The notes under the pieces: model-generated
The model's database searches: none
The model's input: only the letters and a program-made list of their open reading frames with translations
What the model was told of the DNA's origin: nothing
Assembly: GCA_028826165.1 (NCBI GenBank)
Contig: JAPDFW010000147.1
Location: 558,001 to 622,000 of the forward strand
DNA from: Anaeramoeba ignava BMAN
Taxonomy: Eukaryota > Protista > Anaeramoebae
Direction: 5' to 3'
DNA length: 64,000 bases
Position numbers and translations under genes: made by a program
Shown: one piece after another, positions 48,224 to 64,000 of the stretch
Position numbering within the stretch: the first letter of the stretch is position 1
Layout of the letters: every line of letters starts with the position of its first letter

Positions 48224-49935
48224 AATAAAAATTAAATTTAAATTAAATAATAAAAATATTATTCTAATAAGTAATAATTTAATTTCAAATTAAAATTAAA
48301 TTAAAATTAAATTAAATAATAATTTAAAATTATTAAATTTCATTTTAAATTATTTATTAAAATATTTCAATTTTTTTATTAATTTTTTATAATCAAAATA
48401 AAAATAAAAAACCTTTTCTAAATTTAAAATCATTTTATTTTAATTTTGAATTTAAATTTTATAAATAAATTAATAAATAATTTAATATTAAATTTATTTA
48501 TAATTTTAATTAATAATTTTTATTAATAAAAATTAAAATAAATTTTCTTAATTTAATAAATTTAAAAATTAAAAATAAAAATTAAATAATTATTTAAAAT
48601 TATAAATTTATTTTAATTTATTAAAAATAATTTAATTTCAAATCAAAATAAAAATAATTTCAAATTAAATAATAATTTAAAATTATTAAATTTCATTTTA
48701 AATTATTTATTAAAATATTTCAATTTTTTATTAATTTTTATAATCAAAATAAAAATAAAAAAACCTTAAAATTAAATTTAAAATCATTTTTATTTTTATT
48801 TTAAATTTATTAAAAAATTTTTATAATTTTTATAATAAATTAATAAATTTAAAATAATTTAATATTAAATTTATTTTATAATTTTTAATTAATAATTTTT
48901 ATTCACTTTTATTTTTTTTAATAATTAAAAATTAAAATAAATTAAATAATAAAAATATTATTTTAATAAGTAATAATTTAATTTCAAATTAAAATTAGTA
49001 AATTAAAATTAAATTAAATAATAATTTAAAATTATTAAATTTCATTTTAAATTATTTATTAAAATATTTCAATTTTTATTAATTTTTATAATCAAAATAA
49101 AAACAAAAACCTTTTCTAAATTTAAAATCATTTTATTTTAATTTTAAATTTAAATTTTATAAATGAATTAATAAATAAATTTAATATTAAATTTATTTAT
49201 AATTTTTATTAATAATTTTTATTCCACTTTTTAATAATAAAAAAATTAAAATAAATTAAATAATAAAAATATTATTTTTAATAAGAAATAATTTAATTTC
49301 AAATTAAGATAAAATTAAAATCAAATTAAATATTAATTTAAAATTATTAAATTTCATTTTAAATTATTTATTAAAATATTTCAATTTTTATTAATTTTTA
49401 TAATCAAAATAAAAACAAAAACCTTTTCTAAATTTAAAATCATTTTATTTTAATTTTAAATTTAAATTTTATAAAGGAATTAATAAAATAATTTAATATT
49501 AAATTTATTTAAAATTTTTATTTAATAATTTTTATTCCACTTTTTTTTAATAATAAAAATAAAAATAAATTAAATAATAAAAATATTAATTTAATAAGAA
49601 ATAATTTAATTTCAAATTAAAATTAAATTAAAATCAAATTAAATAATTATTTAAAATTATTAAATTTCATTTTAAATTATTTATTAAAATATTTAAACTT
49701 TTTTATCAATTTTTTATAATCAAAATGAAAATAAAAAACCTTTTCTAAATTTAAAATCATTTTATTTTAATTTTAAATTTAAATTTTATAAATGAATTAA
49801 TAAATAATTTAATATTAAATTTATTTAAATTTTTATTTAATAATTTTTTATTCCACTTTTTTCTTAATAATAAAAATTAAAATAAATTAAATAATAAAAA
49901 TATTATTTTAATAAGTAATAATTTAATTTCACATC
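48224..49935. repeat. ~313-350-bp AT-rich tandem repeat, right block (~5 copies), same family and orientation as 44253..45024
   Basis: The same anchor occurs at ~48391, 48742, 49090, 49402 and 49718. Confidence 0.9.
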
Positions 49936-50049
49936 AAAATAAAATGATTTCAAATTGATTTATTAATTTTTTCATTTTTTCATTTTTTCATTTATTAATT
50001 TTTTTATTTTTCATTTTTTCATTTTTTTCATTTTTTTCTATTTTTCAAA

Positions 50050-51288
50050 ATGGAAGTTAAAACAACTATTTGTCCAATTTGCTTTCAAAAATTTTCACAA
50101 GAAAGAAAACCAATGATAATTTGTGAAGAGCATCATTCAATTTGTGAATCTTGTTTCAATACTCTGAATAAATGTCCTTTTTGTGCAAATTCATTGACAA
50201 ATTTTAAACCGATTCAGAATCTTGATTTATTAAAATCGATTGACCAAGAAGACACAAACTCAAATCTTTCTCAAATTCCAATAATTCCTTTAGATCAACT
50301 CGAAATTGAAAAAGAACCCTTTTCTTCTGGAATTTCAACTGATAATTTTCGAGCAACATGGAAGAAAAAACAAGTTATTATCAAAAAAACGAGAATTCAA
50401 ATTGATTCCAATTCACAAAAACAATTTGAAAATGAACTTAATTTGATTGGAAAACTAAAACATCCAAATATTCTCCCTATTTATGGAATCACTAAATTTG
50501 AAAATCGATTTTGTATTGTAATGAAATATGCGGAACAAGGAAATTTACTTGATAAAATCCCAAATTTACAATTCCAAGAAAAAATTGATTTATCTTTACA
50601 AATCATTGAAGGATTAAGATTTTTACATTCAAATTCAATTATCCATGGTGATCTAAAACTCAAGAATATCTTGATTTCCAAAAACAAACCAAAAATTTCT
50701 GATTTTGGAATGTCGCAATTAAGAGAGAAAACTACAGAAAACCTCGGAATCACTTTTTATTCCAATTATTTAGCACCAGAATTTCTTAAACAAGAAAAAT
50801 TTTCTGATACTTCTTGTGATATTTTTAGTTTATCAATCATCTTGTTTGAAATTTTCTCATCAAAACGATATTTCCACAAAAAGAATCGCAGAAAAGCTTT
50901 TATCAAAATGATGAACGAAAAAAGACCATATTTTCCAAACAATTTCCCAAAAGATTTATCAAAATTTATCAAAAAAGGTTGGAAAAAAAATCCACAAGAG
51001 AGATCTACATTAATCCAATTTATTCAATGTTTGGAGAAGATGAAAAATTCAAGTAAATATTTCTTCTTTTTAGTCGTTTCCTATTTTTCTTTCAATTTAA
51101 AATTCGAAATAACAAAAAACATTTAAAAATCTTATTCCTCAATTCATTTTGTGAATTCTCAAAACATTTTCTTTTCAATTCTAAAAATTCTTTTAGATCA
51201 ACCCGAAAAAAGAAAAGAACTCGAACAAACAAACCAACAACCAAACGAGAAAGAGAAAGAGAAAGAGAAAAAGAAGAAATCAAAATCA
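50050..51288 (+). CDS. RING-finger + TKL-like protein kinase; exon 1 50050..51052, exon 2 51197..51288; predicted to continue through microexons past the right edge
   Basis: RING CPIC...ICEEHHSICESC...KCPFC; kinase VIIKK, FENE, HPNIL, HGDLKLKNIL, DFG, YLAPE, DIFSL. Donor TCAA|GTAAAT at 51053. The acceptor TTTTAG|AT restores frame (NQPEKRKELEQ...KKKKSKS) and exon 2 ends in phase 0. Confidence 0.85.
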
Positions 51289-51364
51289 GTAAAAAATTTT
51301 TCAATTTATTAAATTCCAAATTCTTTTTCTAATTTCTTATTTTTATTATTTATTCATTTATCAG

Positions 51365-51779
51365 AAACGAAAGGTTAGTTTTCTCATTCATTAATTAATT
51401 TCTTTCCAGAAAGAAATAGAAACAAAAAATTACAAACAAAAAAAAATCATTTTCTTGTTTTTTCCTTTTAAATTATGAGAAAGAAATATTGATTCATATC
51501 AAATTATTTTTTGTATTAATAGAATGTAATTCATCAAATCAATAATATTTTCAGAATAGAAAAGATTTTTTTTTGGATAAATTTACTCTCAATAAATACA
51601 AATAACTCATTGAAAAATTCATATTCAATAAAAATTAAAAAAAATCAACAATGAATATTCATTTTTTTAATAAATAGAAAGTGAAAAATTAATTAAATCA
51701 ATTCCAATTAATTTTCTCCTCTTCAATTATTTATTAAATTCTATATTTTTTTTTCAACAATTATTTTCTCAAATAGAAA
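51365..51779 (+). other. Four predicted phase-0 microexons in unique sequence: 51365..51373 (KRK), 51523..51525 (N), 51678..51680 (K), 51777..51779 (K)
   Basis: TCAG|AAACGAAAG|GTTAGT; AATAG|AAT|GTAATT; AATAG|AAA|GTGAAA; AATAG|AAA|GTAATT. Confidence 0.55.
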
Positions 51780-52559
51780 GTAATTTATTAAATAATATTC
51801 CCAATGAGATTGATAAATATATTTCTTTTAATTGAAAAAAAAATATTCAGAGAGAAATACAAATGAAATAAAATTTTAAATTTCATTTTTTCAACAAAAA
51901 AAAACTAAAAAAATTGATATAAGAAAACTTTTTATTGTGTATTTGATATTTGAATGAGAATATATTTGATACTTTTAAATATTTTTTGTTTTAATTTGTT
52001 GATTGAAAGATTTTATCAAAAATTTACTTCTTTTTCTTTTCTCTGAATTTCTCTTAATTAAAGATTGATGAAATTTCGATTTGGGTTTGGATCTATTTTT
52101 TTTTTGATTTTAATAAATTAACATTTTGTTTATGTGTTATACGATATCGTTTTTGATAATTCTTAAAAAAATTATTGGAAAAACAATCCATCTTTCATTT
52201 CAAAATATTATTCCTTCTTTCCTTTCCAATTCGAATAAAAAAACAATAAATGAAACAGAAAATCTTTATCTGTAAATTCCCTTAAACAAAATGCATTGAA
52301 TAAATCAAAAATAATAAAATTTGAATTCATTATTCTTTTTATTTATTTATCCAAATTCACTTTTTTTCTTTTTGAAATCAAATAAAAATTACCAAATAAA
52401 TCTAACCATTGAGTATTTTAAGAATTTCTCTTGTTTTTTGTATTAAATGATATCGAGGAAAAAATCCAATCAAAATATTGAAAAGAATCAAAAAAAAGAT
52501 TTACAAACCTCTCCTGAAAGAAATATAGAGAAATCAAGAATTACATTCAAAAAAAATAA

Positions 52560-55500
52560 ATAAATTAATATTTATTATTATTATTTAATAAATAGTCTGT
52601 AAATAATTAAATTCAATAAATAAATAAATAAATAAATTAATATTTATTATTATTATTTAATAAATAGCATGTAAATAATTAAATTCAATAAATAAATAAT
52701 AAATATTTATTATTATTATTTAATAAATAGCATGTAAATAATTAAATTCAATAAATAAATAAATTAATATTTATTATTATTATTTAATAAATAGGAAGTA
52801 AATAATTAAATTCAATAAATAAATAATAAATTAATTAATATTTATTATTATTATTTAATAAATAGAATGTAAATAATTAAATTCAATAAATAAAATAATA
52901 AATTAATTAATATTTATTATTATTATTTAATAAATAGAATGAAAATAATTAAATTCAATAAATAAATAATAAATTAATTAATATTTTTATTATTATTATT
53001 TAATAAATAGCATGTAAATAATTAAATTCAATAAATAAATAATAAATTAATTAATATTTATTATTATTATTTAATAAATAGGATGTAAATAATTAAATTC
53101 AATAAATAAATAATAAATTAATTAATATTTATTATTATTATTTAATAAATAGGAAGTAAATAATTAAATTCAATAAAATAAATAATAAATTAATTAATAT
53201 TTATTATTATTATTTAATAAATAGTCTGTAAATAATTAAATTCAATAAATAAATAATAAATTAATTAATATTTATTATTATTATTATTTAATAAATAGGA
53301 TGTAAATAATTAAATTCAATAAATAAATAAAAAATAAATTAATATTTATTATTATTATTTAATAAATAGGAAGTAAATAATTAAATTCAATAAATAAATA
53401 ATAAAATAATTAATATTTATTATTATTATTTAATAAATAGAATGTAAATAATTAAATTCAATAAATAAATAAATAAATTAATTAATATTTATTATTATTA
53501 TTTAATAAATAGTCTGTAAATAATTAAATTCAATAAATAAATAATAAAATAATTAATATTTATTATTATTATTTAATAAATAGAATGTAAAATAATTAAA
53601 TTCGATAAATAAATAAATAAATTAATTAATATTTATTATTATTATTTAATAAATAGGATGTAAATAATTAAATTCAATAAATAAATAAATAAATTAATTA
53701 ATATTTATTATTATTATTTAATAAATAGTCTGTAAATAATTAAATTCAATAAATAAATAATAAATTAATTAATATTTATTATTATTATTTAATAAATAGG
53801 ATGTAAATAATTAAATTCAATAAATAAATAAATAAATAATAAATTAATTAATATTTATTATTATTATTTAATAAATAGTCTGTAAATAATTAAATTCGAT
53901 AAATAAATAATAAATTAATTAATATTTATTTATTATTATTATTTAATAAATAGCATGTAAATAATTAAATTCAATAAATAAATAATAAATTAATTAATAT
54001 TTATTATTATTATTTAATAAATAGAATGTAAATAATTAAATTCAATAAATAAATAAATAAATTAATTAATATTTATTATTATTATTTAATAAATAGGATG
54101 TAAATAATTAAATTCAATAAATAAATAATAAATTAATTAATATTTATTATTTATTATTTAATAAATAGGATGTAAATAATTAAATTCAATAAATAAATAA
54201 ATAAATAAATAAATAAATTAATATTTATTATTATTATTTAATAAATAGCTTGTAAATAATTAAATTCAATAAATAAATAATAAATTAATTAATATTTATT
54301 ATTATTATTTAATAAATAGTCTGTAAATAATTAAATTCAATAAATAAATAATAAATAAATTAATATTTATTATTATTATTTAATAAATAGGAAGTAAATA
54401 ATTAAATTCGATAAATAAATAATAAATTAATTAATATTTATTATTATTATTATTTAATAAATAGTCTGTAAATAATTAAATTCAATAAATAAATAAATAA
54501 ATAATTTAATATTTATTATTATTATTTAATAAATAGGAAGTAAATAATTAAATTCAATAAATAAATAATAAATTAATTAATATTTATTATTATTATTATT
54601 TAATAAATAGTCTGTAAATAATTAAATTCAATAAATAAATAATAAAATAATTAATATTTATTATTATTATTTAATAAATAGATTGTAAAATAATTAAATT
54701 CAATCAATAAATAAATAATAAAATTAATTAATATTTATTATTATTATTATTTAATAAATAGAATGTAAATAATTAAATTCAATAAATAAATAAATAATAA
54801 ATTAATTAATATTTATTATTATTATTATTTAATAAATAGTCTGTAAATAATTAAATTCAATAAATAAATAATAAATTAATTAATATTTATTATTATTATT
54901 TAATAAATAGTCTGTAAATAATTAAATTCAATCAATAAATAAATAATAAATTAATTAATATTTATTATTATTATTTTAATAAATAGGAAGTAAATAATTA
55001 AATTAAATAAATAATAAAATAATTAATATTTATTATTATTATTTAATAAATAGATTGTAAATAATTAAATTCAATAAATAAATAAATAATAAAATAATTA
55101 ATATTTATTTATTATTATTTAATAAATAGGAAGTAAATAAATTAAATTCAATAAATAAATAAATAATAAATTAATTAATATTTTATTATTATTATTTAAT
55201 AAATAGCTTGTAAATAATTAAATTTAATAAATAAATAATAAATTAATATTTATTATTATTATTTAATAAATAGTTTGTAAATAATTAAATTCAATAAATA
55301 AATAAATAAATAATTTAATATTTATTATTATTATTTAATAAATAGGATGTAAATAATTAAATTCGATAAATAAATAAATAAATAAATTAATATTTATTAT
55401 TATTATTTAATAAATAGGAAGTAAATAATTAAATTCAATAAATAAATAAATAATAAATTAATTAATATTTATTATTATTATTATTATTTAATAAATAGAA

Positions 55501-57220
55501 TGTAAATAATTAAATTCAATAAATAAATAATAATAAATTAATTAATATTTATTATTATTATTATTTAATAAATAGGATGTAAATAATTAAATTCGATAAA
55601 TAAATAAATAAAATAAATTAATATTTATTATTATTATTTAATAAATAGGAAGTAAATAATTAAATTCAATAAATAAAATAAATAAAAATAAATTAATATT
55701 TATTATTATTATTATTTAATAAATAGAATGTAAATAATTAAATTCAATAAATAAATAAATAAAATTAATTAATATTTATTATTATTATTATTATTTAATA
55801 AATAGAATGTAAATAATTAAATTCAATAAATAAATAAATAATAAATTAATTAATATTTATTATTATTATTATTTAATAAATAGAATGTAAATAATTAAAT
55901 TCAATAAATAAATAATAAAATAATTAATATTTATTATTATTATTATTTAATAAATAGATTGTAAAATAATTTAATTAAATTCAATAAAAAAAATAAATTA
56001 ATAAAAATTAATATAATTATATTTATTATTATTATTTAATAAATAGTCTGTAAATAATTAAATTCAATAAATAAATAATAAAATAATTAATATTTATTAT
56101 TATTATTTAATAAATAGTCTGTAAATAATTAAATTCAATAAATAAATAAATAAATTAATATTTAATTATTATTTATTATTATTATTATTTAATAAATAGC
56201 ATGTAAATAATTAAATTCAATAAATAAATAAATAAATAAATTAATTAATATTTATTATTATTATTTAATAAATAGGATGTAAATAATTAAATTCAATAAA
56301 TAAATAATTTAATAACAAGGATGTAAATAAATTAATTAATAAATATTTATTATTATTATTTAATAAATAGGATGTAAATAATTAAATTCAATAAATAAAT
56401 AATAAATTAATTAATATTTATTATTATTATTTAATAAATAGTCTGTAAATAATTAAATTCAAATAAATAAATAATAAATTAATTAATATTTATTTATTAT
56501 TATTATTTAATAAATAGTCTGTAAATAATTAAATTCAATAAATAAATAAATAAATTAATTTAATATTTATTATTATTATTATTTAATAAATAGGATGTAA
56601 ATAATTAAATTCAATAAATAAATAATAAATTAATTAATATTTATTATTATTATTTAATAAATAGTCTGTAAATAATTAAATTCGATAAATAAATAATAAA
56701 TTAATTAATATTTATTATTATTATTATTTAATAAATAGGATGTAAATAATTAAATTCAATAAATAAATAATAAATTAATTTATTTTTATTATTATTATTT
56801 AATAAATAACGAAGTAAATAATTAAATTCAATAAATAATAATAAATTAATTAATATTTATTATTATTATTATTATTTAATAAATAGAATGTAAATAATTA
56901 AATTCAATAAATAAATAAATAATAAATTAATTATTATTTATTATTATTATTTAATAAATAGGATGTAAATAATTAAATTCAATAAATAAATAATAAATAA
57001 ATTAATATTTATTATTATTATTTAATAAATAGGATGTAAATAATTAAATTCAATAAATCAATTAATTAATTAATATTTATTATTATTATTTAATAAATAG
57101 AATGTAAATAATTAAATTTAATAAATAAATAATAAAATAATTAATATTTATTATTATTATTTAATAAATAGATTGTAAATAATTAAATTCAATCAATAAA
57201 TAAATAATAAATTAATTAAT
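52560..57220 (+). other. Tandem array of ~64 units (~72 bp each), each an intron-like repeat plus a variable 3-nt microexon (left block)
   Basis: Unit GTAAATAATTAAATTCAATAAAT...TATTATTATTTAATAAATAG + NNN. First triplet TCT 52596..52598, last ATT 57172..57174. Joined translation SHHENNHDESDENSNDSDSHNDDLSESESINSSEIELFDENDENNNISSHDDDSSDSDENDDNI. The repeat itself is certain; the confidence applies to the microexon reading. Confidence 0.75.
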
Positions 57221-57353
57221 GGGCCTGTCCCAGGCCCATTTGCCAGAAAAAAAAAATAAAAAAAAATAATTAAACAATTTTTTAATTAATTTTTTTTTAA
57301 TTAATTTTTTTTTAATTAATTTTTTTTTAATTAATTTTTTTTTAATTAATTTT

Positions 57354-57438
<85 letters not shown>

Positions 57439-58431
57439 TCATTTCCAAAAAGTGGAATTTCTCTTTATTCCTTTTTTCAACAAATTTTCAAGTTGTCGAA
57501 TTGAGATAAAATCTCTTTTTTTTTGACTCAAAGAAAATAATTTGAGAATTAAATATCTGAAACGATAAACAATATTCATTTCCAAGCAATTAGCCAGAAG
57601 ATAAGGATTTAATCTCAGTTGAGAACAACCCCAACACATTAAAAGAACAAAAATCCCACAAGAATTTCCATCTCTCTGATTCCAATGATGCCAAATTTGT
57701 TTAATCACAAAATCCATATTTAAGTAATTTTTGATGAACTTTTGGAGATTTTTTGCAATTTGATAGGGAATTCGTGAAAAAAGCGTTGATTTACTGTTGA
57801 ATATTAACAATTCTCTTTGATTAAAATGTAGAAAAATCACCACATAATGCATATCATAATAGAAAATAAGAGGAATATATTGTTGTTCACTCACAGAGCA
57901 TTTCAAGAAGAAATCTATCATCTTTTGGAATTCTCTATGACATTTCATCATATGATATGGAAACATGCTTTGATTTATCATAGCTTGTGCATATTGTTTC
58001 AAAATTGTCTTCTCTCTCGTGTGAAAATTTATCAAGAAATTTATCCAACATTCTTCAATAGGAATTTGTGGGATTTGCTTAAAATAGTCCAGAAACTTCC
58101 ATAAAATGACAGAAGAAAATAGATTTTGAGACCAAATCACAAAAAGCAAAACCCATAGTTTGCGATCCCATGGTGAATTTTTATTATCAATTTCTTCTAA
58201 ATTTGGAGGCATACCTTCTAAACATTCTATTAAGGGATTAAATTGAAGTTCAAAAAATTCAGGACCTTGATATAATTTTTCAGACAGAAAGAATTCCAGA
58301 GAATTCATTATATCTGAAAAATCTAATAAGCCATGAAGGTCTATTCTGTACTCCCAATCTTCATTAATCCCAAGTTTTTCAAAATTTACAACTGGTGTTA
58401 CTAAAGTCAACCCTCTGATCTCATTGAGCAA
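57439..58431 (-). CDS. Ulp1/SENP-like (peptidase C48, clan CE) cysteine protease domain carried by the transposon
   Basis: YIPLIFYYDMHYVVIFL (His), LLIFNS (Asp position is Asn), QRDGNSCGIFVL (oxyanion Gln and catalytic Cys), followed by a FRYLIL helix. Confidence 0.7.
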   Translation of the reverse strand: MLNEIRGLTLVTPVVNFEKLGINEDWEYRIDLHGLLDFSDIMNSLEFFLSEKLYQGPEFFELQFNPLIECLEGMPPNLEEIDNKNSPWDRKLWVLLFVIWSQNLFSSVILWKFLDYFKQIPQIPIEECWINFLINFHTREKTILKQYAQAMINQSMFPYHMMKCHREFQKMIDFFLKCSVSEQQYIPLIFYYDMHYVVIFLHFNQRELLIFNSKSTLFSRIPYQIAKNLQKFIKNYLNMDFVIKQIWHHWNQRDGNSCGIFVLLMCWGCSQLRLNPYLLANCLEMNIVYRFRYLILKLFSLSQKKRDFISIRQLENLLKKGIKRNSTFWK

Positions 58432-58623
58432 ATTAGCTTTTTAGTAGGATCCTCTCGAGCTGAACCTTTACCGAAATTTCTCAATTCTCGAAAACCAAAT
58501 TTGGGATAAGTTTTTCAATTCTTTTGGATTCACTTACATTAGTGACTTCCATTTTTGAGAGTAATCAAAAGTTCGATTCTTTCTTCTCAATACTTGAAAC
58601 CTCTTCTATTTCCATAAATTTTC

Positions 58624-60935
58624 CTACAAAATCTTTTTGGCAATCTCTGTGTTCTTTTCTTCCTCATTGATTCGATCATCCATCTCAAAAATGATTTTCT
58701 TTTCAATTTTCTCTTTTCTTTTCCCCACTTTTCTCCTCTTTAAACAGGAAATAAATCCATTATCAATTTTTATCATTGTTGTATTCTCATTATTTTGGTT
58801 TCTCTTTTGATTTCTCTTTTGATTTCTCTTTTGATTTCTCTTTTGATTTCTCTTTTGATTTCTCTTTTGATTTCTCTTTTTATTTTCATTTTCATTTTCA
58901 CTTTCACTTTCATTTTGATTTTGATTTTGAATTTGAATTTGATTTTTATTTTTATTTTGATTTTGATTTTGATTTTGATTTTCATTTTCATTTTGATTTT
59001 CATTTTGATTTTCATTTTGATTTTGATTTTGATTTTGATTTTGATTTTCATTTTGATTTTCATTTTGATATTCACTTTGATATTCATTTTGATATTCATT
59101 TTCAGTTTCATATTCACTTTGATATTCATTTTCATTTTCATTTTCATTTTCATATTCACTTTGATATTCATTTTCATTTTCATTTTCAGTTTCATTTTCA
59201 CTTTGATATTCATTTTCATTTTCATTTTCAGTTTCATTTTCACTTTGATATTCATTTTCACTTTGATATTCATTTTCACTTTGATATTCATTTTCATTTT
59301 CACTTTGATATTCACTTTGATATTCATTTTGATATTCATATTCATTTTCATATTCACTTTGATATTCATTTTCATTTTCATTTTCATTTTCATTTTCACT
59401 TTGATTTTCATTTTGATTTTCATTTTCATTTTCATTTTCATTTTCATTTTGATTTTCATTTTGATTTTCATTTTCATTTTCATTTTGATTTTCACTTTGA
59501 TATTCATTTTCATTTTCATTTTGATTTTCACTTTGATTTCTCTTTTTATTTCTCTTTTGATTTCTATTTTGATTTCTATTTTGATTTCTCTTTTTATTTT
59601 CATTTTCATTTTCACTTTCACTTTCATTTTCATTTTGATTTTGATTTCTCTTTTGGTTTCTCCTTTGATTTCTCTTTTGATTTCTCTTTTGATTTCTATT
59701 TTTCTCTTTTTCTTCTTTTTCCTTCTGTTTTCTGATTCTTTCCTCTTTTTTCCGCTTGTTAATTATTCTTCTCTTCTCTTGCTTAATTTCCACATTTTTC
59801 CATTCTTTTTCATCTCTAAATGTTTTTCGTAAAGATCCATTTCCTAATTTAAAATTATATAAAAGTGCACACACTTCGATTACTTGAATATGAAATTGTT
59901 TCTTGAGTTGAACCTTTTCCTTCAAAATTTTCCATTTTTTCAAGATCGAGAAAACATTTTCGATAATACATCGATAGCGGTTTATATGAAAATTATATTT
60001 TTTATGGTTATTCTTTTTGTTTCTATACTCTCTTTTGGGTGTAATACAATATATAGCTGGAAATGCTTTATCTCCAAGAATTTTATGGGATTTCAATAGT
60101 TCAAGAAGTCCAGATTTTGTTGTTGCCTTGGAATCATGCATGCTCCCTTGGAATCCAGTTTTGAAAAATATGATTTTCCCCTTACTATTGCACACAACAA
60201 TAGATTTGAGAGAAGAATGTCCTCTTTTGACAGAATGATATTTTTTTTCTTTCAAAAGATTCCGAAATCTGGGATGATCTGTCCCATCGATTACCCCAAC
60301 ACAGTTGGGGATTTTTCTTGATTGCCATTTTCGAATTTCTCTTATCCTCTCTTCTCTTGTTAACCAGTGAATTTGGTTGTTGAGAATTTCTCTTAATAAA
60401 GGAACAATTTTTTTTAAATATCTTTCGACTGTACTCTTTCCAATTTTCCACATGGCTCCTAAGATGCGATAAGTGAGAGAATGCCTTAACCATGTTAATG
60501 TGAGTAATAATTTATTTGGAAGATCAAGGGAAGGAATTTGAGATGGAGAAGAAAGAAGATTTTGGGAAGAAGTAGGATGCTCTTGTTGATAAATTTCAAT
60601 TTTGGAAAGAATTTCTTCAAATTGTGAAAAGACAATCCAGTCATATCGGGAGATAAGATATGAGAATTTCTTATTTCTGAATATAGATCCCTTTTCTCTG
60701 AAGAACGAAAATCCAAATTTGGTATAACATTCTGAGAGAATTTATCATTTTGATTCAATTCTTGTAAAAGAGTTGCGTTTTTTGTTTTTAGAAAGAAAGA
60801 AGAAGAGCAAAGATTTAATAAATTTTGGATAACCTATATTTGGTGCCCCAAGTTTATCAAGAATTTCTTTCGTTTGTCGATAAATTCTTATTTGAGGATG
60901 TTTTTCATTCGTTTTTGATTTCGTGTTGATTTCAT
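58624..60935 (-). CDS. Harbinger/HARBI1-like DDE transposase with HTH and a long EN/QN/EYQS low-complexity tail; 5' part frameshifted
   Basis: GVIDGT, KYHSVKRGHSSLKSIVVC, GSMHDS, LGDKAF, YNFHINRYRCIIENVFSILKKWKIL. An HTH segment LLLTLTWLRHSLTYRILGAMWKIGKSTV lies upstream. Candidate ATG at 60935. Confidence 0.88.
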
Positions 60936-61287
60936 ATGAAAAAGCAAAAAAAAAATTTGTTGTTTGTAAAAAGAAGAAAAATGAAAAGAAAAATAAAAAG
61001 AAAAATAAAAGAAAAATTAAAATAGAATAAATAAAGACAATTCTTTTTAGTTGGAAGATTTCAAGAAAAATTCTAAAAACAAAAATAAAGTGAAGTTATG
61101 AGATCCTTTTGAATAGAAATGTTTTATAAAATTTAAAAAAGATTTTTTATTTATTTTTTTTTCTTGATTTTTTTCGAAATTTCTTTTTCGTTTCCTTCTC
61201 AAGACAATAATGTTAATTTTTGAATTTCATGTTGGATTGAAAGTTTATTTGATGATTAAATTTTTTTGTCGACACCGGGACGAGCCC

Positions 61288-64000
61288 AATATTTATTATT
61301 ATTATTATTTAATAAATAGGAAGTAAATAATTAAATTCAATAAATAAATAATAAATTAATTAATATTTATTATTATTATTTAATAAATAGTCTGTAAATA
61401 ATTAAATTCAATAAATAAATTAATTAATATTTATTATTATTTAATAAATAGAAAGTAAATAATTAAATTTAATTAATAAATAATATTTAATTAATATTTA
61501 TTATTATTATTATTTAATAAATAGAAAGTAAATAATTGAATCCAATAATTAATTAATAAAATAATTAATATTTATTATTATTATTTAATAAATAGCCTGT
61601 AAATAATTAAATTCAATAAATAAATAATAAATTAATTAATATTTATTATTATTATTTAATAAATAGTTTGTAAATAATTAAATTCAATAAATAAATAATA
61701 AATTAATAAATATTTATTATTATTATTTAATAAATAGTTTGTAAATAATTAAATTCAATAAATAAATAATAAATTAATTAATATTTATTATTATTATTTA
61801 ATAAATAACTTGTAAATAATTAAATTCAATAAATAAATTAATTAATTAATATTTATTATTATTATTTAATAAATAGGGAGTAAATAATTAAATTCAATAA
61901 ATAAATAATATTTATTATTATTATTTAATAAATAGTTTGTAAATAATTAAATTCAATAAATAAATAATAAATTAATTAATATTTATTATTATTATTTAAT
62001 AAATAGCTTGTAAATAATTAAATTAAATAAATAAATTAATTAATTAATATTTATTATTATTATTTAATAAATAGAGAGTAAATAATTAAATTCAATAAAT
62101 AAATAATTAATTAATTAATATTTATTGTTATTATTTAATAAATAGAATGTAAAATAATTAAATTCAATAAATAAATTAATTAATATTTATTATTATTATT
62201 TAATAAATAGCTTGTAAATAATTAAATTCAATAAATAAATAATAAATTAATTAATTAATATTTATTATTATTATTTAATAAATAGTTTGTAAATAATTAA
62301 ATTCAATAAACCAATTAATTAATTAATATTTATTATTATTATTTAATAAATAGAGAGTAAATAATTAAATCTAAAAATATCAATAAAATTCAAAAAAAAA
62401 CAAATAAAATTATTATTTATTTAATAAATAGAGAGTAAATAATTAAATTCAATAAATCAATAATTAAGAATTTTATTATAAATATTCAAAATAAATATCT
62501 TTTTTTTCAATAAACAGAATGTAAATAAAACAATTATTTTCAAAATTATAAACAAATTTATTCATTTTTAAAATTGATTATTTAATAAATAGGAAGTAAA
62601 TTATTGATAATTTATAATTGAAAAATGGAGAATGATTCAATTTTTGAATAATGAAAATATCAATAAATGAAAATATTTATTAATTTTTTTTTGAAAATTT
62701 AAAATTAATTCAAAAATAAACAGCCTGTAAATCATTAAATTCAAAACCATTTAAACATCAAAATAAATTATTTATTATTATTATTATTATTTAATAAATA
62801 GCGAGTAAATAATTAAATCCAATAAATAAATAATTAATTAAATTAATATTTATTATTATTATTATTTAATAAATAGAATGTAAATAATCAACTTCAATAA
62901 ATTAATAATTAATACTTATTATTATTTAATAAATAGCATGTAAATAATTCAATTCAATAAATAAATTAAATAATACTTATTATTATTATTATTTAATAAA
63001 TAGTCTGTAAATAATTAAATTCAATAAATCAATTAATTAATTAATATTTATTATTATTATTTAATAAATAGAGAGTAAATAATTAAATCTAAAAATATCA
63101 ATAAAATTCAAAAACAAATAAAATTATTATTTATTTAATAAATAGAGAGTAAATAATTAAATTCAATAAATCAATAATTAAGAATTTTATTATAAATATT
63201 CAAAATAAATATCTTTTTTTTCAATAAACAGAATGTAAATAAAACAATTATTTTCAAAATTATAAACAAATTTATTGATTTTTAAAATTGATTATTTAAT
63301 AAATAGGAAGTAAATTATTGATAATTTATAATTGAAAAATGGAGAATGATTCAATTTTTGAATAATGAAAATATCAATAAATGAAAATATTTATTAATTT
63401 TTGAAAATTTAAAATTAATTCAAAAATAAACAGCCTGTAAATCATTAAATTCAAAACCATTTAAACATCAAAATAAATTATTTATTATTATTATTATTAT
63501 TTAATAAATAGCGAGTAAATAATTAAATCCAATAAATAAATAATTAATTAAATTAATATTTATTATTATTATTATTTAATAAATAGCCTGTAAATAATCA
63601 ACTTCAATAAATTAATAATTAATACTTATTATTATTTAATAAATAGTCTGTAAATAATTAAATTCAATAAATAAAATTAAATAATACTTATTATTATTTA
63701 ATAAATAGTTTGTAAATAATTAAATTCAATAAATAATAAATTAATTAATATTTATTATTATTATTTAATAAATAGAGAGTAAATAATTAAATCTAAAAAT
63801 ATCAATAAAATTCAAAAACAAATAAAATTATTATTTATTTAATAAATAGGAAGTAAATAATTAAATTCAATAAATCAATAATTAAGAATTTTATTATAAA
63901 TATTCAAAATAAATATCTTTTTTTTCAATAAACAGAATGTAAATAAAACAATTATTTTCAAAATTATAAACAAATTTATTCATTTTTAAAATTGATTATT
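61288..64000 (+). other. Continuation of the intron/3-nt microexon array (~36 units; runs off the right edge)
   Basis: First triplet GAA 61320..61322, last AAT 63936..63938. Joined translation ESKKPFFLGFLRNLFRRNEPRNHSRRNEPRPSFREN. It includes longer, diverged units with CAG acceptors. Confidence 0.75.

What the first reader, a model, noticed from the sequence alone, without database searches (positions are those of the whole stretch)
52560..64000. A protein region apparently encoded one codon per exon: ~100 consecutive 3-nt microexons disguised as a satellite
Seen: nearly every repeat unit is (T/C)AG-NNN-GTAAA(T/A). GTAAAT is also the donor of ordinary introns here (RPL36, ABHD13, the PAS and coiled-coil genes), and AATAG/CAG are acceptors. 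The variable part is always exactly 3 nt while the surrounding AT tracts slip freely in length. By hand I count 64 + 36 triplets of 13 kinds (TCT, CAT, GAA, AAT, GAT, CTT, ATT, TTT, AAA, CCT, GGA, AGA, CGA). All end in A/T, matching host codon bias, and none is a stop even though GAA, AAA, AGA, CGA and GGA are one step from TAA or TGA. Joined, they read SHHENNHDESDENSNDSDSHNDDLSESESINSSEIELFDENDENNNISSHDDDSSDSDENDDNI-ESKKPFFLGFLRNLFRRNEPRNHSRRNEPRPSFREN: an acidic linker, an amphipathic basic helix, then an R/N/E/P repeat. One shifted frame hits TGA at once, and the other gives M/I/L shadow-frame text. G on the + strand is almost confined to AG, GT and the triplet. Known: isolated 3-nt microexons and Schistosoma micro-exon genes exist, but I know of no run of ~100 single-codon exons. 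Inference: this is a spliced coding region that gene finders and repeat maskers would miss.
Basis: partly seen in the sequence, partly recalled or inferred. Interest (0 to 1): 0.97.

Follow-up and report, generated by a model that had tools for sequence, protein, structure and literature searches.

The report
Kinase tail of 108 one-codon exons
What looks like repetitive junk DNA in the anaerobic amoeba Anaeramoeba ignava is most likely the end of a kinase gene written one amino acid per exon, 108 times in a row; a transcript-derived protein of a sister gene shows that this organism does splice such runs, though no RNA covering this particular run could be read.

Summary
Confirmed. The window is Anaeramoeba ignava. 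It holds 100 AG-NNN-GT units; 8 more and a short terminal exon lie just past its end. The ~70-nt spacers differ by 4%, the triplets by 60%. Triplets look like codons (no G/C in position 3, no stops). Genome-wide the motif occurs 849 times with a 3-nt core (control 20) but 50 times with a 4-nt core (control 55). A transcriptome-derived protein of a sister ankyrin gene matches runs of 14 and 8 consecutive 3-nt exons residue for residue, so such runs are spliced here. The upstream RING-kinase exon is transcribed and the model joins it in phase 0. RNA for the array itself was not obtained. Block copies with identical introns carry swapped codons from a 13-codon pool, which points to tandem duplication plus short gene conversion, not intron insertion. 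Corrections: codon use does not match host bias (Ser is TCT 19/19); the 4-kb gap is a recent Harbinger-like transposon in one intron; three units have broken splice sites. The scan had already found single-codon exon arrays on other DNA of this genome. I found no paper describing them.

The parts
50050..51052 (+). Exon 1: RING finger plus protein kinase domain (334 codons + 1 nt); NCBI KAJ5066238.1
   Evidence: Pfam Pkinase E=1e-45, Sina_RING below cut-off; 100% to P0001; RNA-like contigs cover it and stop at 51052
51053..51196 (+). Ordinary GT-AG intron 1 (phase 1)
   Evidence: zero depth in run X1; used by the NCBI model
51197..51288 (+). Exon 2, 92 nt, K/E/Q-rich linker; exons 1+2 end in phase 0
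   Evidence: in the NCBI model; not seen, which skipped 51220-51361 as repeat
51365..51779 (+). Candidate linker microexons between non-repetitive introns: 9 nt at 51365-51373 (K-R-K), 3 nt at 51523 (N), 51678 (K, GTGAAA donor) and 51777 (K)
   Evidence: splice-site listing; inference. NCBI reads through the 51523 exon into the intron to a stop; that extension has no contig depth
51780..52595 (+). 816-nt inferred intron; unique 5' part (18% G+C, no long ORF), last ~36 nt are the acceptor half of the array spacer
   Evidence: weakest link of the model
52596..57174 (+). Array part 1: 64 single-codon exons (S, D, N, E, H rich) between near-identical ~70-nt introns
57221..61287 (-). 4067-bp DDE transposon (PIF/Harbinger-like) inserted in the intron after exon 64 of the array; AAT target duplication, imperfect terminal repeats
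   Evidence: DDE_Tnp_4 E=1e-29; 3 other copies of the left end at 92-97% with the same boundary; removing it restores a normal 75-nt spacer
61320..63938 (+). Array part 2: 36 single-codon exons in the window (basic/hydrophobic stretch, then an R/N/E/P repeat); 8 more follow at L011:1011-1769 and the terminal exon starts at L011:1958
62354..64000 (+). Three copies of a ~720-nt block (starting 62354, 63072, 63776) with distinctive older introns and swapped codons
52938..52942 (+). Unit with broken donor (GA instead of GT)
56808..56813 (+). Unit with broken acceptor
61806..61811 (+). Unit with broken acceptor (AA instead of AG)

Best explanation
The array is the C-terminal coding region of the upstream RING-kinase gene: 108 consecutive 3-nt, phase-0 exons (about 105 with intact splice sites), each one amino acid, separated by ~70-nt spliceosomal introns and closed by a short terminal exon, giving a protein of about 480 aa. 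Shown: anatomy, codon-like statistics, frame fit, transcription of exon 1, and splicing of such runs at a sister gene. Inferred: the ordinary spliceosome removes the introns one at a time by intron definition (two neighbours cannot be engaged at once across 3 nt); most units are included, and a skipped or dead unit only deletes one residue, whereas a retained intron always brings a stop. Origin (inferred): one old microexon with the flanking halves of its introns was tandemly duplicated, and unequal crossing-over and short gene-conversion tracts primed by the identical flanks then homogenised the introns and swapped codons among units from a small pool. The product is a fast-evolving, probably disordered tail (acidic stretch, basic-hydrophobic patch that may bind membranes, R/N/E/P repeat) in a kinase family whose members carry many different C-terminal modules.
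For: 3-nt cores 849 vs control 20, 4-nt cores at background. Over six loci, 312 units and 80 locus-specific triplet kinds: G/C at positions 1/2/3 = 39/33/4 (Fisher P=2e-11), no stop (P about 0.01). EukProt protein P0141 (A. ignava Trinity contig) matches 14 + 8 consecutive 3-nt exons at C73 in order. A paralogous kinase-ankyrin gene has 35 such exons between unrelated introns of 63% mean identity, so the motif is not a by-product of repetition. Exons 1+2 end in phase 0 and the terminal exon gives a stop in frame 0, as at the C57 and C87 sister arrays. First intron has an array-type 3' end and last intron an array-type 5' end, as tandem exon duplication predicts. Splice G lost 2/184 vs the spacer's one consensus C lost 6/92 (P=0.018, biased by how units were detected). 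Block copies 1 and 2: 1 substitution in 554 intron bases but 4 of 24 codon bases changed, all to codons already in the pool; 13 identical introns sit behind 8 different codons. Sister arrays with related spacers read as different protein-like text; C87 gives hydrophobic runs of 20 and 18 residues (P=0.007 vs shuffles).
Against: No RNA read, contig or transcript-derived protein covers this array. The contig at the end of exon 1 runs only 12 letters further and they were not shown. The link to the kinase crosses an 816-nt intron, and part 2 lies behind a 4-kb recent transposon. Three units are broken. Helical periodicity of the hydrophobic patch is not significant (P=0.15). The proven sister runs have diverged introns and are much shorter (14 vs 108). 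Polishing errors in a repeat could mimic some codon swaps.
Confidence: 0.7

Rival explanations
1. Genuine microexon array, but now partly or wholly dead: disconnected from the kinase by the 816-nt stretch, or cut after residue 64 by the transposon, and decaying as a satellite.
For: Recent 4-kb insertion, three broken units, a (TAAA)n expansion in the penultimate intron, insertions and dead units in sister arrays, no RNA evidence past exon 1, NCBI model ends near 51.65 kb.
Against: All lesions are frame-neutral and intronic; no stop, no 2- or 4-nt core among 108 units; splice G residues better kept than the spacer C; the transposon has no GTAAAT donor on the coding strand; the NCBI terminal exon has no contig depth.
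Confidence: 0.17
2. A combinatorial diversification device: exons are skipped often or in a regulated way so that one gene makes a large family of tails.
For: Every exon is 3 nt and phase 0, so any subset keeps the frame; introns are nearly identical; the kinase family is expanded (43 matches) with variable C-terminal modules.
Against: The one transcript-derived protein I could check includes all 22 of its microexons. It is a single assembled isoform, so rare skipping is not excluded.
Confidence: 0.07
3. Introner-like elements inserted an intron after every codon of a pre-existing coding stretch.
For: Related spacers (67-84% identity) occur in BTB and coiled-coil genes on other contigs; identical introns flank different codons.
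Against: One codon per amino acid (except Arg), and not the host's favourite for Ser, Pro and Leu; chimeric first and last introns; block duplications; no terminal repeats or target duplication in the spacer; its hairpin is not better than shuffles (-6.9 vs -5.1 +/- 1.9 kcal/mol).
Confidence: 0.03
4. A neutral AT-rich satellite with a mutable 3-nt core, never spliced.
For: Looks like the many other AT satellites of the window.
Against: Codon-position G/C asymmetry, stop avoidance, length specificity genome-wide, same motif between unrelated introns, and the transcript match at C73.
Confidence: 0.02
5. Assembly or polishing artefact.
For: Long-read assembly of a repeat; the five 2- or 4-nt cores in sister arrays are all homopolymer +/-1.
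Against: Error cannot create 13 codon-like cores, hundreds of copies in many genes, or the transcript match. It could alter copy number or single codons.
Confidence: 0.01

Closest known systems
Schistosoma micro-exon genes (MEG; PMC10526429)
   Same: Coding region built from a run of very short exons, mostly multiples of three, missed by automatic annotation; skipping keeps the frame.
   Different: MEGs have 10-20 exons of 3-81 nt (mostly 15), introns of 0.1-5 kb, a signal peptide and proven alternative splicing. Here: 108 exons, all 3 nt, ~70-nt near-identical introns, on the tail of a cytosolic-type RING-kinase.
Isolated 1-15-nt microexons of plants and animals (PMC8831610; single-nucleotide exon, PMC4674806)
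   Same: Canonical GT-AG flanks; too small for both flanking introns to be engaged at once; commonly misannotated.
   Different: Known cases are single or at most a few adjacent, with unrelated introns; no run of dozens was found in the papers searched.
Homogenised repetitive introns of Argiope MaSp2 spidroin genes (PMC9779670)
   Same: Iterated introns about 97.6% alike within a gene, excluding first and last, delimiting repeated coding units; concerted evolution.
   Different: Spidroin exons are large and themselves homogenised; here the exon is one codon and is the variable part.
Recursive splicing at zero-nucleotide ratchet points (10.1101/006163)
   Same: Acceptor and donor almost juxtaposed; stepwise removal of intron segments.
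   Different: Ratchet points leave no base in the mRNA and subdivide long introns; these units leave a codon each (shown at the C73 sister gene).
Single-codon exon runs in ankyrin loops of A. ignava
   Same: Same 3-nt phase-0 exons, same splice motifs, same kinase family.
   Different: Those runs are up to about 30 long, sit in loops of a folded domain and have diverged introns; this one is 108 long, forms a free tail, and has cloned introns that allow codon swapping.

Membership tests
Spliceosomal microexons (3-nt) | Canonical AG acceptor and GT donor around the 3 nt | tested here: met
   105 of 108 units; 3 broken
Spliceosomal microexons (3-nt) | Present in mature mRNA (this array) | tested here: inconclusive
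   run X1 contigs stop 12 letters after exon 1; no transcript-derived protein found
Spliceosomal microexons (3-nt) | Present in mature mRNA (same architecture, sister gene) | tested here: met
   22 of 22 exons match EukProt protein P0141
Spliceosomal microexons (3-nt) | Reading frame fits flanking exons; coding signature | tested here: met
   phase 0 on both sides, no stops, GC3 near zero
Schistosoma-type MEG | Run of symmetric micro-exons | tested here: met
   108 exons of 3 nt, phase 0
Schistosoma-type MEG | 10-20 exons with long introns (0.1-5 kb) | tested here: not met
   108 exons, median intron 69 nt
Schistosoma-type MEG | Secreted protein with N-terminal signal peptide | tested here: not met
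   N-terminus is a RING finger followed by a kinase
Schistosoma-type MEG | Isoform diversity by exon skipping | not testable with these tools
   needs raw or long reads; sister transcript includes all exons
Recursive splicing (ratchet points) | Zero-nucleotide exon, AG directly followed by GT | tested here: not met
   3 nt always lie between and are translated at the sister gene
Introner elements | Near-identical introns in unrelated genes | tested here: inconclusive
   spacers 92% alike within the array, 67-84% to arrays in other genes
Introner elements | Insertion into pre-existing coding sequence (host codon use, target duplication or terminal repeats) | tested here: not met
   Ser TCT 19/19 against 26% in host ORFs; no terminal repeats
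PIF/Harbinger-like transposon (57221-61287) | DDE_Tnp_4 transposase, 3-bp A/T target duplication, terminal inverted repeats, dispersed copies | tested here: met
   terminal repeats imperfect (11 of 20); second ORF has no Pfam match

The most novel reading that the evidence does not exclude
The cloned introns turn the tail into an editable string: any codon cassette can be copied into any position by short gene conversion, and units can be skipped without frame cost, so the amoeba has a generator of new protein sequence from a small codon alphabet (here a kinase tail, elsewhere transmembrane segments and binding loops), possibly used to diversify recognition or signalling proteins. That would be a new kind of protein-diversification system rather than an odd gene layout.
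Probability: 0.2. Interest if true: 0.95.

Novelty: new variant of a known kind. Interest (0 to 1): 0.86.

Why it matters
If spliced as modelled, about 11.6 kb of pre-mRNA with some 113 introns yields about 340 coding bases, the extreme of exon smallness and intron density. It is a natural test bed for open questions on intron definition, order of intron removal and splicing fidelity (errors add up over 107 steps and are readable as single-residue deletions), and for intron gain by tandem duplication. It shows protein sequence evolving by whole-codon replacement. In practice, gene finders, aligners and repeat maskers miss hundreds of such exons in this genome, so public protein models of expanded kinase, ankyrin and BTB families are wrong at their most variable parts; other AT-rich protist genomes may hide the same.

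Tried and rejected
The joined (spliced) model was not sent to any search tool; searches went exon by exon by reference, and the joined text was only computed inside scripts from files in /data. Three protein searches found no transcript-derived protein of this gene; each sees only 0.55-1.75 times the query length. That call skipped 51220-51361 and 52325-52350 as repeats (it did not call them human-like), made afterwards by reference, overlapped these two places, and I sent no more of them after that. NCA versus NCT cores genome-wide (21 vs 51) are inconclusive once this array's 23 clonal hits are removed, so I do not claim avoidance of a competing acceptor. The spacer hairpin and the amphipathic order were not significant. 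Paper searches and the genome paper with supplements gave no description of such arrays; the library lacks most subscription journals.
Full report
Source. The kinase exon at 50050 is 100% identical to KAJ5066238.1 of Anaeramoeba ignava; the window is contig C137:558001-622000 of a 42.8-Mb assembly. The genome paper reports 80.65% A+T overall and 91.86% in introns (PMC11550330).

Observation. The array continues past the window for 8 units and ends at an exon (L011:1958) that reads D-H-N-stop in frame 0, 108 units in all. Spacers begin GTAAAT and end AAATAG, have a median length of 69 nt and 3% G+C, and differ from each other by 4% substitutions; triplets have 27% G+C and differ by 60%. None of the 107 introns could be retained without an in-frame stop. 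Three units have a broken splice site.

Chance. Genome-wide, AAATAG-NNN-GTAAAT occurs 849 times against 20 for the reversed pattern; with a 4-nt core 50 against 55; with TAA or TGA 8 times. Three units in a row at intron spacing give 215 hits against 47. Across six loci (312 units, 80 locus-specific kinds) G/C stands at codon positions 1, 2 and 3 in 39, 33 and 4 kinds (P=2e-11) and no kind is a stop (P about 0.01). In a paralogous kinase-ankyrin gene on C61, 35 such exons lie between unrelated introns (63% mean identity), with only three 2- or 4-nt look-alikes. The motif is therefore not a product of repetition.

Splicing is real in this organism. Searching with one ankyrin exon by reference returned P0141, a protein predicted from a Trinity contig of A. 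ignava (EukProt EP01156). Its gene is C73:176.5-178.6 kb. The residues between its three ordinary exons equal, in order, a run of 14 and a run of 8 genomic 3-nt exons spaced about 57-92 nt apart (the Met exon has a GTGAAT donor). This lead came from earlier notes of the scan and was checked here.

This gene. Run X1 behaves as RNA: its contigs cover exon 1 at depth 31-68, end exactly at the donor (51052) and leave intron 1 empty. The last contig has 12 further letters, not shown. There is no depth on the terminal exon of the NCBI model, which reads through a candidate 3-nt exon at 51523 into an intron; exon 2 was skipped as repeat, so holes prove nothing. Exons 1 and 2 end in phase 0. Up to four small candidate exons follow, then an 816-nt intron whose last 36 nt are array-type. 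No transcript-derived protein of this gene was found. Inclusion of the array in the kinase mRNA is thus inferred, not shown.

The gap. 57221-61287 is a 4067-bp element with a DDE_Tnp_4 transposase, an AAT target duplication and at least three other copies at 92-97%. Taking it out restores a normal 75-nt spacer, so it inserted recently into an existing array intron. Whether the 4.1-kb intron is still spliced is open.

How it arose. The first intron has an array-type 3' end and the last an array-type 5' end, as expected when a segment holding the end of one intron, a microexon and the start of the next is duplicated in tandem. Three copies of a 720-nt block show the second process: between copies 1 and 2 there is 1 substitution in 554 intron bases but two codons changed by two bases each; between copies 2 and 3 an Arg codon became Glu between two unchanged, distinctive introns; each new codon is already in the array's pool, and 13 identical introns follow 8 different codons. 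Short gene-conversion tracts anchored in the shared flanks explain this best (inference; polishing error could mimic part of it). Related spacers (67-84%) carry different text in BTB and coiled-coil genes on C1, C57 and C87; the C87 string has two uncharged runs of 20 and 18 residues, like transmembrane helices (P=0.007), which suggests selection on the protein level in at least one cloned array.

How it works. Exons of 3 nt are too small for both flanking introns to be engaged together; in plants such introns are removed one after the other (PMC8831610). I infer stepwise intron-defined splicing with mostly full inclusion, as in P0141, and harmless single-residue losses where a unit is skipped or dead. 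The product would be a RING-kinase of about 480 aa with a disordered acidic tail, a basic-hydrophobic patch and an R/N/E/P repeat. Paralogues carry ankyrin, ubiquitin or SH3 modules at this position, so the tail is the family's variable part; a role in localisation or partner binding is a guess.

Known kin and novelty. It works like a micro-exon gene taken to its limit but fails MEG membership (exon number, intron size, signal peptide; PMC10526429). Homogenised introns are known from spidroins (PMC9779670) and juxtaposed splice sites from recursive splicing, but neither has a one-codon variable exon. No paper found describes such arrays. The scan had noted the class on other DNA of this genome; what this locus adds is the length (108), the free-tail setting and the evidence for codon swapping. 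Verdict: observation confirmed, interpretation supported, confidence 0.70 that the array is a live coding tail of the kinase, about 0.95 that the units are or were real exons; new variant of a known kind, at its far edge; interest 0.86.

Noticed in passing
G000:C1:942329-942796 and 1057922-1072900 (minus): Long arrays with another spacer family whose triplets (ATG, ATT, TTG, ATC) have T in the middle: they read sensibly only if each 3-nt exon straddles two codons (phase 1), e.g. Asp runs.
   Followed up: no
L020/L021 (C87:271-279 kb, minus): About 75 single-codon exons from a small, mostly hydrophobic alphabet spelling two transmembrane-length runs; the gene's 5' end looks broken and a ~650-nt insertion interrupts the array.
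   Followed up: partly
L018, L020: The five cores of 2 or 4 nt in sister arrays are all a codon plus or minus one base of a homopolymer, as long-read errors would give.
   Followed up: partly
G000 C35:359712, C108:197137, C112:120243, C137:749067, 749251, 805239, C147:98323: Seven TGA cores: could be phase-shifted exons or stop codons on their own exon.
   Followed up: no
window 57439-58431 and 58624-60453 (minus): The transposon has a second 330-aa ORF without Pfam match, and its transposase ORF carries about 400 residues of N/Q/E/K repeats.
   Followed up: partly
window 49500-49950 and L011:2150-4520: What appears by eye to be the same AT-rich intergenic satellite flanks the gene on both sides.
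   Followed up: no
array spacer, last 12 nt: The spacing TTTAAT-AAA-TAG resembles an A/T-shifted form of the fused branch point and acceptor motif of trichomonad introns (from memory, untested).
   Followed up: no
window 50941: An A>G difference between the RNA-like contig (depth 68) and the assembly in the kinase exon.
   Followed up: no
window 50050-51052 family: More than 40 RING-kinase paralogues, several named 'palmitoyltransferase' at NCBI, with ankyrin, ubiquitin or SH3 tails; several public models read through introns where microexons lie.
   Followed up: partly
window 52449-52555: A 38-codon open stretch with coding-like composition just before the array, without a donor site; may be a remnant of an insertion.
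   Followed up: partly
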